A stretch of 64,000 nucleotides of DNA from Octopus bimaculoides (GCF_001194135.2 NC_068983.1:146573834-146637833); one strand, 5' to 3'; counted from the first letter of the stretch, positions 22,196 through 38,352 are shown. Notes: generated from the letters alone by a model not told the origin. Numbers and translations: made by a program.

Positions 22196-22897
22196 NNNNN
22201 NNNNNNNNNNNNNNNNNNNNCCCCCCCCCCCTCACTTTGTCACCCCCCCAACTTAGTTAAGTTTTTCTTGGACATCGATTATATTATGCATTATATGAAT
22301 ATTATGCATGAAAAACACATTCCCTTATAAAATTACGCTGGATTCATTTAATGAAACACAAATACATGTGCATTGCACATATTCGGGACATCACATGATT
22401 CACTTAAATAAAATACTTATATGCATGAACTCATAACTTTACAATCCCATGGAGCAAATTTGGTGTCAAAATCTGTGAAATCTTACAATTATGTGCACGT
22501 ACTCAAACACGAACAAAATGTATAATGCAGCTGAATACGCGCGCGCGCGCGTATACACATACATTACCTATTTTAGATAATACTTTCACTATAGACTTCC
22601 AGTAACGCATGCGTAATGATGTACAGTGACTGGCTGGAGTTAGCTGCACCATACATATACATATGAGCATTACAGATTTTCTTTCCTCATAACTTACAGA
22701 AACATGGATATTTTTCAATGAAATTTTTAATTAATATGCTTCAGATGGTGTAGATTCCGATTGTATTTAAATCTGTTCTGAAATAAAGTTTTCAAAGAAG
22801 AAAAAATGTAATGTATGTCAGTATGTATGAGTGTGTAGTGGCGCGAAATTATGAATCAACAAGTATTACAGACTTTAAAGGGAACGCTGTTAACGTC

Positions 22898-22990
22898 ATG
22901 GATACTGCAACCACACCCATTAACAGCCCTGTCACCACCACCAACACCACCAAGACTACCACTGCTACCACCGCCATCACCAATGCCAGC

Positions 22991-23027
<37 letters not shown>

Positions 23028-23707
23028 GCAGGACACCGGCCGTCAACACCGAAACCACCACTACTTCGACAAACTCTGCTGCGACTACCACCACCATTGA
23101 ACCTGGCAGTACCAACACCACTGTCAACACCACCATCAACAACTACAACAAGATGAACAAGATAAACAACACCACAACCGCTACAAAAAACATATCTGCC
23201 AGCACCACAAAAATAAATTTTGCCGATGCAACTAAAGAAAAAAGAACAATAATAACATTCATCCAAAACCAAATTAAAGATACAAAATCCCTTCTCACGA
23301 AAGAAGGTGACAACGTACAAATACACATTCCAAAAGAAATAATCGAAAACACAAAAAAGAAGTACATAACATACAGACTTACCAACACGAAAACAAAGCG
23401 ACCGGAGAATTTTACCACCGAAAAGATTGAAATTTGTCTCAAACCTATATGGCCCTTTCAAAACCATGTTACTTGGGGGCGCACGTTCGCCACCGTTCAA
23501 GTACGCTTTCAGAGCGAAGACTTAGCAAAGCAATTTTCGACACTCTCTCTCCACACAGATGACTTAGTGATGATACCGAGTTATCTTGGACAGAGAGTGA
23601 CGAAGGTGACAGTAAAGAATGTCTCTTCAAAAGTGGAGAAGCAGTCTATAATATCTGCTATATGCCTCGAAATGGAGGAGGCAAATATACTAGAAATTGC
23701 TGCGTAG
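22898..23707 (+). pseudogene. L1/Tx1-like ORF1 (gag-like) N-terminal half, 269 aa, ending at the satellite
   Basis: Open frame with Thr/Asn-rich N-terminus, FADATK, and RRM-like ATVQVRFQSEDLAKQF...PSYLGQRVTKVTVKNV; family assignment is from recalled motif resemblance only. Confidence 0.55.
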
Positions 23708-34199: not shown

Positions 34200-37100
34200 G
34201 TATGAAGGAAAGAACGAAAAAAACGAAGGAGCGAACGAACGTACAAAAGAACTAACGAACGAAGAAACGAACGACTGAACGAACGAATGAACGAACGAAC
34301 TTACGTACGTACGTAAGTACTTACGTAAGAACGAACGTACGAAGGAACGACCAAAGATCGACCAAACGATCGACCGACCGAACGAACGTACGTAAGCACG
34401 AAATATCGGAAGAAAGTACAAAAGTCCGAACGAACGAACAATCGAACGAACGTACATAAGTACGTACGTGCGTACATACATACGAACAAACGAACAAAAG
34501 AACGAAAAAACGAAAGAAAGAACGAACGAACGACCGAAAGAACGAACGTTGGTAAGTAAGAACGAACGAACGAGTGAAACAAACGAACGAGTGAAACAAA
34601 CGACCGAACAAACGAACGAAAGTTGTAAGTGTGTACGAACGAAAGAACGTACGTCCATACGTAAAATGTACGAACGAACAAACGAACGTTCGTACGTAGT
34701 ACGAACATAAGAACGAACGAACGAACGAACTACGTACTTACGTACGGACGGACGAAAGAACGAACGAATTAACGAACAAACGTACGCACGAATGAACGAA
34801 CGAATGAGCGTACGTACGTATGAAAGAAAGCACGAACGTACGTAAATACGTACATACGAACGAAGGAACAAACGAACGAAAGAAAGAACGAATATATGAA
34901 CGTACATAGATACGTACTTACGAAAGACAGAACGAACGTACGTACAAACGAGCGAAAGAACGAACAAACGAACGAATGAACGAACGTACGTACGTAAGTA
35001 CGAACGAATGAAGAAACGATCAAACGTAAATACGTACGAACGTAAGTACGTATGAATGTACGAACGAACGAACAAATTTACATACGAACGAACAAACAAA
35101 CGTTCGAGCAAACGAAAGAAAGAACGAATGTATGTACGTACGATCGAACGAACGAAAGAAACACGAACGAACGAACGAACGTACGTAAGTACAAACGACC
35201 GAACGAACGTGCGTATGTACGTACGTACGTATGTACGTACATTCGTATGTAAGTACAAACGAACGAACGAACGAACTACGTAAATATGTACGTACGTAAG
35301 TATGTATGTACGTAAGTATGTACGTACGTAAGTACGCACGAACGAACGAACGAACGAACGAACAGATGCATGTACATACGACCGTACGTTCGAACGAACG
35401 AACGAGCAAACGAACGTACGTTCATACAAACTAATGAACGTGTGTACGTACGAACCCACGAAAGAACGTACGAACGAAATGAAGTAACGAACATACGTAC
35501 GTACGTACGAACGAACGAACGAAGGAACGAACCAACGAAACAACGAACGTACGTGTGTACGTAAGTACATACGTAAAAATCATCGAATGAACGGACGAAA
35601 GAATGTACTTACGTACGAACGAACGAACGTACGTGGGTACGTACGTACGTACGTACGTATGAAAGATAGAACGAAAGAAGGAAGGAACGAACGACTAAAC
35701 GAAAGAACGATCGAAGAAGCGAAAGAAAGTACGAATGTACGAACGTACGAGAGTATATACGTACGTACGAACGAACCACCGGAAGAAAGATCGAACGTAT
35801 GTACGAACGACCGAACGAACGAATGAAGTAACGTACGTACGTACGTACGAATGAACGAATGATTGTATGCACGTACATACGTACTTAGGTACATAGGTAC
35901 GTACGTATGAATGAACGAACGAACGTACATACGTATGTACGAAAACACGAACGAACTATCGTACGTACGTATGTACGTACATATGTACGTACGTATGTAC
36001 GTTCGTATCTACGTGCATGCGAACGAACGAACGAACATACATACGTACGTGCGTACGATGGAACGCACGAACGAACGAACTAAAGGATTAACGAACGAAC
36101 GAACGAATGAACGAAAGAACAAACGAATTAACGAACAAACGTACGTACGTACGAACGAACGAGTGAGCGTACGTTCGTATGAAGGGGAGCACGAATGTAC
36201 GTAAATACGTACATACGAACGAACACACGAACGAACGAAAGAACGAATGGATGAACATACGTACATACGACCGACCGAACGAACGTATGTACAAACGAAC
36301 GAAAGAACGAACGAAGGAACGAATGAACGAACGTACGTACGTAAGTACGAACGAATGAAGAAACGATCAAACGTAAATACGTACGAACGTAAGTACGTAC
36401 GAATGTACGAACGAACGAACGAACAAATTTACATATGAACGAACGATTGAACGATCAAGCAAACGAACGAAAGAACGAATGTATGTACGTACGATCGAAC
36501 GAATGAACGAACGAAAGAACGATCGAACGAACGAAGGTATGTACGTGCGTTCGAGCGATCGAACGTACATACGTACGTACGTAAGTACCTACGAACAAAC
36601 GAACGAACGAAGGTACGTACGTGAGTACGTTCGTTCGAATGAACGAAAGAACGAAAGAACGAACGAACGAACGTACGTACGTACGAACGACCGACCGAAC
36701 GAATGAACGAATGATCGTACGTACGTATTCACGATCGAACGAACGAACGTACGTAGGTACGTAAGAATGTCTGAATGAACAAAAGAACGAACGAACGAAG
36801 CAGCGTACGTACGTTCTTACTAACAAACGTAAGTACTACGAACGTACGAACTTACGTACATATGTACGAATGAATGATAGAACGAACGATCGAACGAACT
36901 AACGAATGAACGAACGTACGTACGTATGTGTGAACAAACGAACGAACGTACGTACGTATGCACGTAAATAAGTACGTACATACGAACGAACGAACGAACA
37001 TACGTACGTACGTATGAACGAACGAACGTGCGAACGAAAGAAATAATTAACGAACGAACGAACGAATGAACGAAAGAACGAACGAACGAACGAACGAACG

Positions 37101-37890
37101 AAAGTACGAAAGTTCGTACGTACGTACGTACAAACGAACGAACGAACGTACGTACCTAAGTACGTCCGTATAAAAGAACGAACGAACGAATGAACATACG
37201 TACGTACGAACGAACGAACGAACGAACGATCGAAAAAAGAATTAACGAAGGAACGAACGAATGAACGAACGAACGAACGAGCGATCGATCGAACGAAAGA
37301 ACGAAATTTCGTACGTACGTACGTGCGAACGAACGAATGAACGAACGAAACCAATGAACGAACGAACGTACGTACGTACGTACGACCGAAAGAACGAAAG
37401 AACTAACAAACGAACGAACGAACGTACGTATGTACGTATGTATGTACGTAAGTACGCAAGTACGAACGAATGAACGAAAGTCCGTACCTTCGTACGTCCG
37501 AACTTACGAACGAACGAACGAATGAACGAACGAAACCAATGAACGCACGACAGAAAGAACGAAAGAACTAACAAACGAACCAACGAACGTACGGACGTAT
37601 GTATGTACGTAAGTACGCAAGTACGAACGAACGAACGAAAGTCCGTACCTTCGTACGTCCGAACTTACGAACGAATGAACGAACAAAAGATTGAACGTAC
37701 GTACGTACGTACGTCCAAACGTACGACCGAACGCACGAAGGAACGAACGAACCAAGGAACGAACGAAAGATCGGATGAAGGAACGAACGTACAAACGAAC
37801 GAACTAATGGACGTACGCACGTGCGAACGAACTTTCGAACTAACGAACGAAAGAACGAAAGAACGAACGAGCGAACGAACGTACGTACGT
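34200..37890 (-). repeat. Same compound satellite in inverted orientation: (CGAA)n and (CGTA)n
   Basis: Strand bias flips at ~34200 with no gap; reverse complement of 34500-34630 aligns to 31330-31450. Confidence 0.97.
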
Positions 37891-38352
37891 GCCATTAAGG
37901 AAGTACAATCTACGCATGCGCAAGGGATTTGCCTTCCCGGAAGCCCCTCGTGTGCGCATGCGTAGTAAAACCAGTACTTAAAGTGTTTCTTTCGCTTTCT
38001 CAGTCTTTTCAGCATGATACCTTTGACGTGATAGCTACTTGCTCCTTTGGCAAGCATCAACGAAGGTTTCAACCTTCCAATGCTGATAACAAACTAACCA
38101 GCGGCTGCCATGCTGAATGACACAGGACTTGTAAAACCAAATATCACCAGAAATAAAACTTATTTTATTATGTTGTTAATTGTTCTACTGTTTCTTTATA
38201 TATAATTTTGTTGAAAGGTGATAGAGACCAGTACAGAATACGAAATTATCTCTCTCACAACTCGTCAACTGGGACTGTTTCTTTATATATAATTTTGTTG
38301 AAAGGTGATAGAGAGAGATTAATGTCTCGATTGCAACTATCAACCTTTTACA
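37891..38352 (+). repeat. Gypsy 5' LTR, main portion, with internal duplication; PBS-like TGGTGACCCC at 38354-38363
   Basis: Homologous to 43878-44240; ends ...CCTTTTACA. Confidence 0.9.

What the first reader, a model, noticed from the sequence alone, without database searches (positions are those of the whole stretch)
22834..37900. A 15-kb LINE-ORF1 + satellite block splits the 5' LTR of a Gypsy element 20 bp from its end
Seen: the LTR portion at 37891 lacks its first ~23 bp, and a 19/20 match to those bases lies at 22834-22853, preceded by AGTG, which matches AGTT after the 3' LTR. Everything between (22854-37890: L1/Tx1-like ORF1 plus the whole satellite) therefore appears to be a later insertion. 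No TSD is visible around the insert and ~3 LTR bases are missing, which argues against clean target-primed insertion. Inference: the 14-kb array arrived or grew after the Gypsy inserted, so the TSD-bounded element brackets the age of the satellite locus. The nesting order is Gypsy, then LINE/satellite and LTR family B.
Basis: partly seen in the sequence, partly recalled or inferred. Interest (0 to 1): 0.8.

Follow-up and report, generated by a model that had tools for sequence, protein, structure and literature searches.

The report
Gypsy LTR split by repeat block
In what is probably an octopus genome, a retrotransposon's left terminal repeat is broken 20 bases from its start by about 15 kb of later DNA (the front stump of a LINE element plus a long, degenerate four-base repeat in two opposite orientations); it is real, but it is ordinary nested repeat DNA whose length depends on three assembly gaps.

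Summary
TGTAGTGGCGCGAAATTATG (22834-22853) matches nt 1-20 of the 3' LTR (43855-) at 19/20. It is the only other hit in the window (expected 0.01). The truncated 5' LTR (37891-38352) resumes at nt 21-24. PPT, PBS, a 4-bp flank match (AGTG/AGTT) and an O. sinensis relative with the same termini, the same PBS and a 4-bp TSD fix the element ends.

The 15.04-kb filler has three parts:
- An 850-bp 5' stump of an L1/Tx1-type LINE: a 44-nt leader plus 269 ORF1 codons, cut before the CCHC knuckle, with no ORF2.
- About 10.5 kb of degenerate (CGTT/CGTA)n, which holds all three N gaps.
- 3.7 kb of the same array in opposite polarity, with the flip at about 34184.

It is not a homogeneous satellite and not a palindrome. 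The filler postdates the Gypsy copy. It is not a clean TPRT insertion.

The Gypsy interior is little decayed, while only about 60% of the array's CG-to-CG spacings are still exactly 4 bp. I therefore favour arrival of an already old, LINE-bearing array by break repair or template switching (about 0.4). Stepwise in-situ build-up comes second.

The LTR pair (82.5% identical) is not a usable clock. The structure is ordinary nested repeat DNA and of low interest.

The parts
22830..22833 (+). Left flank tetranucleotide AGTG, the putative target-site duplication of the Gypsy element
   Evidence: Read directly from the sequence. It matches AGTT at 44241-44244 in 3 of 4 positions. A related O. sinensis element makes a perfect 4-bp TSD, CTAG.
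22834..22853 (+). Nt 1-20 of the Gypsy 5' LTR (TGTAGTGGCGCGAAATTATG), detached from the rest of the LTR
   Evidence: 19/20 match to 43855-43874. It is the only other hit in the window at up to 3 mismatches, against 0.01 expected by chance.
22854..22897 (+). 44-nt leader upstream of the LINE ORF1 start codon. It may be the LINE 5' end; this is not verified.
   Evidence: Sequence. The conserved domain starts at ORF1 residue 107 here and at residue 106 in the O. sinensis relative P0002, so the ATG at 22898 is the likely true start.
22898..23707 (+). Truncated ORF1 of an L1/Tx1-type LINE: 269 codons plus a fortuitous stop. Homology to relatives ends at about 23701, before the CCHC knuckle.
   Evidence: 83% identical to the O. 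bimaculoides protein A0A0L8GYS2. The family has 157 representatives. Relatives carry a CCHC knuckle about 40 aa further on. The relative P0002 lies upstream of an APE/zf-RVT ORF2. The AF2 model (pLDDT 88.7) gives top PDB fold matches that are nearly all RRM-type domains.
23709..34183 (+). Left arm of a degenerate tetranucleotide array, (CGTT/CGTA)n on the + strand. It contains all three N gaps.
   Evidence: TRF finds period 4 with 70-73% matches. AT skew is -0.4 to -0.7 throughout. CGTT:CGTA is 497:252 and CpG observed/expected is 3.3.
26158..26810 (.). Assembly gap 1 (653 N) inside the left arm
   Evidence: Its left flank 25908-26157 is a 99.2% copy of 25095-25344.
28599..29227 (.). Assembly gap 2 (629 N) inside the left arm
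   Evidence: Both flanks are the same array in the same polarity.
30478..30577 (.). Assembly gap 3 (100 N) inside the left arm. Its flanks are partly redundant.
   Evidence: 30313-30477 recurs at 30624-30879 (96-100% identical in pieces), and 30578-30627 equals 29525-29574.
34184..37890 (+). Right arm: the same array in opposite polarity, (CGAA/CGTA)n on the + strand. It abuts the LTR remnant directly.
   Evidence: The skew flips once, at ...GTTCACTC|GAACGTAC..., inside an ungapped contig. Unit make-up and purity are the same as in the left arm. It is not a mirror copy of the left arm: identity is about 69% in every register.
37891..38352 (+). Remainder of the Gypsy 5' LTR, from nt 21-24 to the end (...TTTTACA). 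It includes an extra 87-bp partial tandem copy at 38187-38273.
   Evidence: Aligns to 43878-44240 at 82.5% identity over 361 aligned sites. The duplication appears.
38354..38366 (+). Primer-binding site TGGTGACCCCAAG
   Evidence: Sequence. The same PBS lies next to the 5' LTR of the O. sinensis relative L010.
38353..43854 (+). Gypsy internal region: gag (CWYH..C..PC knuckle), protease DTGS, RT core deleted (about 625 bp relative to L010), RNase H, integrase H2C2 + rve, and 3 frameshifts. The PPT is at 43831-43850.
   Evidence: Pfam hits RT_RNaseH, Integrase_H2C2 and rve. Reading frames. Comparison with L010.
39146..41050 (+). Nested small LTR element ('family B') inside the Gypsy protease. Its LTRs are 98% identical and its TSD GCCT lies at 39142-39145 and 41051-41054. 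It contains two 10-N gaps.
   Evidence: The two Gypsy halves abut exactly in L010 (6818|6816).
43855..44240 (+). Intact 3' LTR of the Gypsy element (TGTAGTGG...TTTTATA)
44241..44244 (+). Right flank tetranucleotide AGTT, the putative TSD partner

Best explanation
Shown: a defective Ty3/Gypsy copy (22834-44240) in an octopus scaffold had its 5' LTR broken between nt 20 and nt 21-24 after integration. The break now holds 15.04 kb of foreign DNA with three parts:
- the 5' 850 bp of an L1/Tx1-type LINE (leader plus the first 269 ORF1 codons);
- about 10.5 kb of degenerate (CGTT/CGTA)n;
- 3.7 kb of the same array in reverse polarity.

Inferred: the filler most likely arrived as DNA that was already old. 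It would be a copy or fragment of a LINE-bearing tetranucleotide array from elsewhere in the genome, placed at a double-strand break in the LTR by end-joining capture or by replicative template switching. It was probably not made by Gypsy integrase, by one canonical target-primed LINE insertion, or by recent slippage growth on the spot. Under this reading the LINE and the array became neighbours at the donor locus, because LINEs of this group sit in tandem arrays. The polarity flip either pre-existed in the donor or marks a strand switch during copying. The filler has no evident function.
For: Split LTR and order of events:
- The 20-mer is unique and complementary to the truncated LTR, in the same orientation, and starts exactly at LTR nt 1.
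- PPT and PBS are present.
- The O. sinensis relative L010 has the same TGTAGTG...ACA termini, the same PBS and a 4-bp TSD.
- Both junctions lie inside ungapped contigs.

Not a clean TPRT insertion:
- The LINE keeps its 5' end but lacks the rest of ORF1, all of ORF2 and any 3' tail.
- There is no TSD around the filler.
- One polarity flip lies inside the array.

The array is older than, or foreign to, the site:
- The Gypsy interior shows about 700 in-frame pol codons with 0 stops, and only 3 of 67 private changes at columns conserved in 13 homologues.
- The LINE stump is open for 269 codons.
- Only about 60% of the array's CG-to-CG spacings are still exactly 4 bp, and position 3 is non-T in 9-14% of units.
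- Purity is flat (0.42-0.62) along both arms, and there are almost no long internal duplicates. Recent in-situ slippage or unequal crossing-over would leave pure tracts or long duplicates.

LINE-array association:
- The relative in L001 is flanked on both sides by (TTA)n.
- The relative in L002 abuts 20 copies of a 12-mer at its 5' end.
- Tx1-group LINEs are known to target microsatellites (PMC4494074).
- L1-Tx1 families are recently active in Octopus (PMC13282606).
Against: - No donor locus, empty site or second copy of the junctions could be looked for, because no octopus genome could be searched by DNA with these tools.
- The left junction lies only 44 nt upstream of the ORF1 start. That would be a coincidence for a random DNA breakpoint. 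It fits a reverse-transcribed 5' end better.
- The argument that the array is older than the Gypsy depends on the interior decay estimate. The LTR pair taken at face value (K2P 0.20) would make the Gypsy old enough for in-situ origin and decay.
- The array may have been born heterogeneous or may mutate fast. Losses of CG go to TG, CA and CT about equally (41:37:42).
- No microhomology is visible at either junction.
- The chain linking the two junctions crosses three N gaps.
Confidence: 0.4

Rival explanations
1. Stepwise build-up on the spot. A (CGTT/CGTA)n tract arose or landed in the LTR at nt 20-24 and grew, and part of it inverted. A Tx1-type LINE, or an internally deleted derivative, that targets such arrays was then reverse-transcribed into the array's left edge. 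Its cDNA 5' end joined the LTR stump.
For: - The LINE stump keeps its start codon and a 44-nt leader, as expected if reverse transcription ran to the RNA 5' end.
- Relatives sit in tandem arrays, and Tx1-group elements target microsatellites.
- An internally deleted relative exists, with the ORF1 N-part fused to the ORF2 C-part in L003.
- The ORF1 stump is open, so it may be younger than the array.
- The LTR pair at K2P 0.20 would allow a long residence time.
Against: - It needs three or more independent events at one spot, with the LINE exactly at the array/LTR boundary.
- The array lies on one side of the LINE only.
- The array shows no purity gradient, no pure core and almost no long internal duplicates.
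- The Gypsy interior looks too fresh for the array's degree of decay.
Confidence: 0.25
2. LINE first. A full-length Tx1-type LINE with a (GAAC)n-type 3' tail inserted into the LTR. The tail then expanded into the right arm, and a later inversion or inverted duplication of array replaced the rest of ORF1 and all of ORF2.
For: - The right arm has the polarity expected for a 3' tail of the + strand LINE, and it abuts the LTR directly.
- L003's 5' flank contains a short stretch resembling GAAC-type units on the LINE's + strand. The matches are only 14-16 nt, which is weak.
- Small target deletions and missing TSDs occur in some non-LTR insertions (own knowledge).
Against: - No trace of ORF2 or a 3' UTR is left.
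- The arms are not mirror images: identity is about 69% in any register.
- It requires a tail to expand to 14 kb and then decay uniformly.
- The 3' tail of this LINE family is unknown.
Confidence: 0.1
3. Assembly artefact. The scaffold misjoins contigs across the N gaps in the array, or inside family B, so the 15-kb spacing or even the linkage is not real.
For: - Three N gaps lie between the two junctions.
- Gap flanks are redundant.
- Several 10-N gaps in the window are flanked by identical 52-104-bp sequence, which indicates unmerged contig overlaps.
- The LTR pair is discordant with the interior.
Against: - A misjoin would not produce two LTR pieces that complement each other to within 0-3 nt in the same orientation, with matching flank tetranucleotides.
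- Both junctions lie inside contigs.
- All gap flanks have the same polarity and composition.
- The Gypsy halves either side of family B abut exactly in the O. sinensis relative, and family B has a perfect TSD.
Confidence: 0.08
4. The 20-mer is an independent LTR fragment or a chance match, and the 5' LTR at 37891 is simply truncated.
For: - Other fragments of related elements occur upstream, at 15916-18050.
- The TSD is imperfect (3/4, about 5% by chance).
- The LTR pair may come from different subfamily members.
Against: - The chance expectation is 0.01 per window.
- The fragment ends where the truncated LTR begins.
- It starts at LTR nt 1.
- The upstream flank is neither a PPT nor Gypsy interior.
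Confidence: 0.02

Closest known systems
Nested transposon insertions in LTR retrotransposons, as used for relative dating in repeat-rich genomes such as maize intergenic regions (own knowledge)
   Same: A later sequence interrupts an LTR. The two LTR pieces are complementary, and the host element gives a lower bound on the order of events. Family B inside the protease is a textbook example with a perfect TSD.
   Different: The filler in the LTR has no TSD, is not one element, and is mostly simple-repeat DNA. The LTR clock fails here, because the LTRs are 82.5% identical while pol is nearly undecayed.
Tx1-group (L1 superfamily) target-specific LINEs such as Kibi and Koshi, which insert into (TC)n and (TTC)n microsatellites (Kojima and Fujiwara 2004, cited in PMC4494074)
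   Same: The ORF1 family is linked to an APE + zf-RVT ORF2. Relatives lie in tandem arrays: (TTA)n on both sides in L001 and a 12-mer array in L002. The window copy adjoins a tetranucleotide array.
   Different: The window copy is a 5' stump with the array on one side only. Target specificity for CGTT/GAAC arrays is not shown.
Endonuclease-independent or break-repair-associated LINE insertions and filler-DNA capture at double-strand breaks (own knowledge: Morrish et al. 2002 for L1; Moore and Haber 1996 and Teng et al. 1996 for Ty1 cDNA)
   Same: There is no TSD, 0-3 bp are lost at the target, the LINE piece is 3'-truncated, and the filler is composite.
   Different: The filler is 15 kb and mostly array DNA, far larger than typical captured fragments. 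No break-repair signature such as microhomology can be seen.
Long degenerate simple-repeat arrays of the (AACG)n/(ACGT)n class that RepeatMasker would report as simple repeats
   Same: The period is 4. The units are CGTT and CGTA in a 2:1 ratio. Short (TACG/TATG)n microsatellites also occur elsewhere in the window, at 7675-7800.
   Different: The array is about 14 kb long, has CpG observed/expected 3.3 against 0.5-0.8 in the flanks, and has two head-to-head arms.

Membership tests
Ty3/Gypsy LTR retrotransposon (host element) | Two direct LTRs bounded by TG...CA | tested here: met
   The LTRs read TGTAGTGG...TTTTACA (5', split) and TGTAGTGG...TTTTATA (3'). They are 82.5% identical over 361 aligned sites.
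Ty3/Gypsy LTR retrotransposon (host element) | PBS next to the 5' LTR and PPT before the 3' LTR | tested here: met
   TGGTGACCCCAAG lies at 38354-38366 and GGGGGTGGGTGGGGGGAGAG at 43831-43850. The same PBS is found in the O. sinensis relative.
Ty3/Gypsy LTR retrotransposon (host element) | Pol domain order PR-RT-RNase H-integrase | tested here: met
   DTGS protease, the start of RT, RT_RNaseH, Integrase_H2C2 and rve occur in that order. The RT core (about 625 bp) is deleted relative to L010.
Ty3/Gypsy LTR retrotransposon (host element) | Short target-site duplication flanking the element | tested here: inconclusive
   AGTG versus AGTT matches at 3 of 4 positions, which has about a 5% chance. 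The relative L010 has a perfect 4-bp CTAG. If the element is an inter-element recombinant, no TSD is expected.
L1/Tx1-type LINE (filler, 22854-23707) | ORF1 protein homologous to the ORF1 of an element carrying an APE endonuclease / RT / zf-RVT ORF2 | tested here: met
   It is 37-40% identical (E 5e-36) to P0002, whose locus L001 has Exo_endo_phos and zf-RVT ORFs directly downstream. L003 fuses this ORF1 type to an ORF2 C-terminus.
L1/Tx1-type LINE (filler, 22854-23707) | ORF1p architecture of an RRM-like domain followed by a CCHC knuckle | tested here: inconclusive
   The AF2 model (pLDDT 88.7) gives top PDB fold matches that are nearly all RRM-type domains, with weak E-values of 4e-3 to 8e-2. 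The CCHC knuckle is present in relatives but lies beyond the truncation point in the window.
L1/Tx1-type LINE (filler, 22854-23707) | ORF2 with APE and RT; 3' UTR/tail; flanking TSD | tested here: not met
   The array starts at about 23709. Nothing but period-4 array lies between there and 37890. No TSD surrounds the filler. This is a fragment, not an element.
L1/Tx1-type LINE (filler, 22854-23707) | Placement in the Tx1 clade by RT phylogeny | not testable with these tools
   There is no RT in the window copy, and no close full-length relative could be retrieved.
   The period is 4 with only 70-73% matches. Identity is about 69% in every register, and there is no preferred offset or higher-order repeat. 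It is better described as a degenerate microsatellite-type array.
   No octopus genome could be searched by DNA. There is no such array in the 11 loci fetched or elsewhere in the window.
Canonical target-primed reverse transcription insertion | 3' end of the element at one junction, variable 5' truncation, TSD | tested here: not met
   The pattern is the opposite: the 5' end is kept, the 3' end is lost, there is no TSD, and the array reverses polarity inside the filler.

The most novel reading that the evidence does not exclude
A lineage of Tx1-type LINEs in octopus targets CGTT/GAAC-type arrays and, when it lands off-target, seeds and spreads such arrays. On this reading the split LTR would record the retrotransposon-driven birth of a 14-kb CpG-dense tandem-repeat locus whose order of events can be read from the nesting.
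Probability: 0.07. Interest if true: 0.6.

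Novelty: new member of a known kind. Interest (0 to 1): 0.2.

Why it matters
The main value is for annotation. It gives a clean worked example of nesting order in a very repeat-rich cephalopod genome: a Gypsy copy first, then the LINE/array filler and, separately, family B.

It also carries a warning. LTR divergence is not a safe clock here, because the LTRs are 82.5% identical while pol is almost undecayed.

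If the filler could be traced to a donor locus, it would document kb-scale movement of simple-repeat DNA by break repair or template switching. If the LINE-array link proved to be target specificity, it would add a tetranucleotide-array-targeting lineage to the Tx1 group in molluscs. Neither would be a major surprise.

Tried and rejected
- Pfam scan of the ORF: only a low-complexity 'Menin' hit, discarded.
- Structure prediction from 2 sequences: pLDDT 41, unusable. It was repeated with 30 sequences.
- Exact-protein look-ups of the window ORF1 (two start codons), P0001 and P0017: not on record. The same locus in other assemblies could therefore not be fetched.
- Search for close DNA relatives of the LINE stump in the 9 loci held at that point (L001-L009): none.
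- Test for a palindrome or fold-back origin of the two arms: BLAST gives about 69% in every register, k-mer anti-diagonal counts show no dominant centre, and there are no matches of 85% or better. Rejected.
- Test for a higher-order repeat or large internal duplications: only a 232-250-bp copy next to gap 1 and a few 50-85-bp pieces.
- Gypsy relatives, to see whether the GCC is variable: the closest (L010, O. sinensis) shares the interior at 73-83% and has the same PBS and termini, but its LTR body is unalignable, so the GCC question stays open.
- dN/dS against L010: it does not discriminate, because dN of 0.10-0.13 is compatible with either age. It was replaced by a count of private changes at conserved columns.
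- Rfam and tRNA scans of the region: nothing.
- Literature search for an octopus satellite of this type: nothing found.

Full report
**Source and assembly state.** The window is lower-quality scaffold sequence with 17 N runs. The only close protein relative of the ORF in the finding is an Octopus bimaculoides protein (83% identity). More distant relatives were fetched from the Octopus sinensis genome. The window is therefore most likely octopus DNA, probably O. bimaculoides.

The three gaps flagged by the scan (26158-26810, 28599-29227, 30478-30577) all lie inside one arm of the tandem array. The left junction (LTR stump/LINE) lies in contig 22221-26157. The right junction (array/LTR) and the polarity flip lie in contig 30578-39473. 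Each junction is therefore read through without a gap.

On both sides of every gap the sequence is the same array with the same strand skew and composition. Continuity across the gaps cannot be shown. The flanks carry redundant pieces: 25908-26157 is a 99.2% copy of 25095-25344, 30313-30477 recurs at 30624-30879, and 30578-30627 equals 29525-29574. The reading frames that the ORF listing draws across the gaps are meaningless. The array length is approximate.

**Checking the observation.** The 3' LTR starts at 43855 (TGTAGTGGCACGAAATTATGGCCGCCATTAAGG...), directly after a polypurine tract at 43831-43850. It ends at 44240 (...AACCTTTTATA). The 5' copy ends at 38352 (...AACCTTTTACA) and is followed by C plus the primer-binding site TGGTGACCCCAAG. 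Its homology to the 3' LTR begins only at 37891 (GCCATTAAGG), which corresponds to nt 24 of the 3' copy.

The missing start is found at 22834-22853 as a 19/20 match. With up to three mismatches allowed these are the only two hits in the window on either strand, against 0.01 expected from shuffles. The match begins exactly at LTR nt 1, is in the same orientation, and stops where the truncated LTR resumes. The DNA upstream of it is neither a polypurine tract nor Gypsy interior, so it is the start of a 5' LTR and not of another element's 3' LTR.

The flanking tetranucleotides are AGTG and AGTT (3/4, about 5% by chance). A related, intact element in O. sinensis (L010, LTRs 96% identical) has the same TGTAGTG...ACA termini, the same PBS and a perfect 4-bp TSD, CTAG. 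This supports the boundaries and the 4-bp TSD length.

The '3 missing bases' are one GCC of GCCGCC. The two LTRs differ by several other indels, so a loss at the break is not established.

**What the filler is.** It has three parts.

*(i) 22854-23707: a LINE stump.* A 44-nt leader is followed by an ORF of 269 codons. Pfam finds nothing real. A profile search of 1.8 billion representatives finds a family of 157. Longer members carry a CCHC zinc knuckle about 40 residues beyond the matched domain.

The best distant relative, P0002 (37-40% identity, E 5e-36), sits in O. sinensis directly upstream of ORFs with Exo_endo_phos and zf-RVT domains. Another relative (L003) is an ORF1 N-part fused to an ORF2 C-part.

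An AlphaFold model built from 30 family members (pLDDT 88.7) gives PDB fold matches whose top hits are nearly all RRM-type domains, with weak E-values. Assignment to Tx1 proper cannot be tested without an RT.

The conserved domain starts at residue 107 here and at residue 106 in P0002, so the ATG at 22898 is the likely true start. Homology to relatives stops at ...ILEIA (about 23701), where they continue ...EE.NW.G...VEGR.P.C..CG. The copy is cut inside ORF1. It has no knuckle, no ORF2 and no 3' end.

*(ii) 23709-34183: the left arm.* This is a period-4 array with 70-73% matches to CGTT.

*(iii) 34184-37890: the right arm.* This is the same array in the opposite polarity. The AT skew flips once, from about -0.6 to about +0.5, at ...GTTCACTC|GAACGTAC....

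*Shared properties of the two arms.*
- CGTT:CGTA is about 2:1 in both.
- CpG observed/expected is 3.3, against 0.5-0.8 in the flanks.
- About 60% of CG-to-CG spacings are exactly 4.
- Position 3 is non-T in 8.6% (left) and 13.6% (right) of units.
- About 3% of spacings are out of phase.
- The fraction of bases in perfect units is flat at 0.42-0.62 along the whole length.

The arms are not mirror images. Any register aligns at about 69%, and there is no preferred offset or centre. Long exact internal repeats are almost absent apart from those next to gaps. 'Satellite' is thus a loose term. This is a long, degenerate, microsatellite-type array in two head-to-head arms.

**Order of events and the clock problem.** Because the filler lies between two complementary pieces of one LTR, it entered after that LTR existed.

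The Gypsy is not a simple clock, however. The LTR pair has K2P 0.20 (82.5% identity). The divergence is uneven: the ends are 92-93% identical and the middle 73-83% (chi-square p = 0.014).

The interior looks fresh:
- About 700 in-frame pol codons contain no stop codon. There are three frameshifts and one 625-bp RT deletion.
- A gag-protease frame of 233 codons is open.
- The integrase piece differs at only 3 of 67 columns where at least 90% of 13 homologues agree, as few as the best-preserved homologues.

Ten per cent neutral decay per lineage would be expected to give about nine stops. Either the middle of one LTR was converted from a diverged subfamily, or the element is an inter-element recombinant. 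In the second case the 3/4 TSD could be chance.

The two Gypsy halves on either side of the nested family B element do belong together. They abut exactly in the O. sinensis relative (L010 6818|6816), and family B has a perfect TSD GCCT and LTRs with K2P 0.019.

**Mechanism.** One canonical target-primed LINE insertion is excluded for three reasons. The LINE keeps its 5' end and lacks its 3' end. There is no TSD. The array reverses polarity inside the filler.

Recent growth of a microsatellite on the spot is unlikely. It would give pure tracts or long duplicates. The array looks more decayed than the Gypsy interior and the open LINE stump next to it.

My preferred reading (about 0.4) is that an already degenerate, LINE-bearing array from elsewhere was copied or captured into a break in the LTR. 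This would be end-joining capture or replicative template switching, and the flip would be either inherited from the donor or made by a strand switch.

The LINE-array neighbourhood is then explained at the donor. Relatives of this LINE lie in tandem arrays: (TTA)n on both sides in L001 and 20 copies of a 12-mer at the 5' end in L002. Tx1-group LINEs are known to target microsatellites (PMC4494074). L1-Tx1 families are recently active in Octopus vulgaris (PMC13282606).

The main weakness is that the left junction lies only 44 nt before the ORF1 start, which fits a reverse-transcribed 5' end better than a random breakpoint. That favours the second reading (about 0.25): the array was at the site first, and a LINE or an internally deleted derivative was then reverse-transcribed into its left edge.

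A LINE-first scenario with an expanded 3' tail (about 0.1) fits the polarity of the right arm and a weak hint in L003's 5' flank. It needs the most steps.

An assembly artefact (about 0.08) is unlikely to create complementary LTR pieces, but it cannot be excluded for the length and internal order of the array.

**Comparison with known things and verdict.** This is a nested-repeat structure of a familiar kind: a Ty3/Gypsy copy carrying two later insertions. One is a textbook nested LTR element (family B). The other is an untidy composite of a LINE stump and simple-repeat DNA without insertion hallmarks.

The mildly unusual points are the 14-kb size and CpG density of a tetranucleotide array, its two head-to-head arms, and the discordance between the LTR pair and the interior. 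No RNA family or tRNA lies in the region.

I rate it as a new instance of a known kind, of low interest.

Noticed in passing
window 37891-38352 vs 43878-44240, and 41052-43209: The Gypsy LTR pair is only 82.5% identical (K2P 0.20), with conserved ends and a divergent middle. Meanwhile pol has about 700 in-frame codons with no stop and only 3 of 67 private changes at conserved columns. The LTRs are probably not simple sister copies (conversion or an inter-element recombinant), so LTR dating is unsafe here.
   Followed up: partly
window 39146-41050 (second copy at about 15920-18024): A small LTR element ('family B', about 1.9 kb) is nested in the Gypsy protease. Its LTRs of about 330 bp are 98% identical, its PBS is TGGTGACCCCGAAGG and its TSD GCCT is perfect. 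A second copy lies upstream in the window; its LTRs are only about 78% like the first copy's, while a 315-bp internal stretch is 92% alike.
   Followed up: partly
window 38187-38273: An 87-bp segment is made of two pieces that are 100% identical to 38274-38314 and 38365-38409. It is a partial tandem copy of the LTR end/PBS region that lacks the middle 50 bp. It is either a very recent event or an assembly artefact.
   Followed up: no
window 39474-39483, 10688-10697, 51461-51470: Several 10-N gaps are flanked by identical sequence on both sides (39376-39473 = 39484-39581; 10636-10687 = 10698-10749; 51357-51460 = 51471-51574). These look like unmerged contig overlaps, so the scaffold carries small artificial duplications.
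   Followed up: no
L001 7719-7777 and 13348-13376; L002 120-357; L003 1-45: Distant relatives of the LINE sit in tandem arrays. The O. sinensis copy is flanked on both sides by (TTA)n. A Logan contig has 20 copies of GATGAATTAATG abutting the ORF1 start. L003 is an internally deleted copy (ORF1 N-part fused to ORF2 C-part) whose 5' flank contains a short stretch resembling GAAC-type units.
   Followed up: partly
window 23709-37890: The array has one CpG per 4 bp in intact units (CpG observed/expected 3.3 against 0.5-0.8 nearby). Lost CGs go to TG, CA and CT about equally (41:37:42), so there is no deamination signature.
   Followed up: partly
window 45281-46123 (+): A Mos1/mariner-type transposase remnant (HTH_48 and Transposase_1 domains in two frames) lies 1 kb right of the Gypsy.
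   Followed up: no
window 55279-55710 (-): An open frame matches Pfam Trypsin (E 3e-14) and is preceded by a long poly-Leu run. No homologue was found by the word-indexed protein search. It may be an exon or a pseudogene of a serine protease.
   Followed up: partly
window 7675-7800: A short (TACG/TATG)n microsatellite lies next to a 100-N gap. It shows that ACGT-type repeats also occur as ordinary small microsatellites in this genome.
   Followed up: no
window 12200-12565 (-), 18172-18600 (-), 57797-58138 (+): There are further non-LTR retrotransposon fragments: RVT_1 at 12.2 kb and, weakly, at 57.8 kb, and a weak, sub-threshold Exo_endo_phos (APE-type) match at 18.2 kb. Repeated fragments are shared between 10-12 kb, 21 kb and 59 kb.
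   Followed up: no
window 14203-14401, 19128-19245, 52029-52147: Three self-complementary stretches (palindromes of 118-200 bp, 82-89% arm identity) turned up in the window self-comparison.
   Followed up: no
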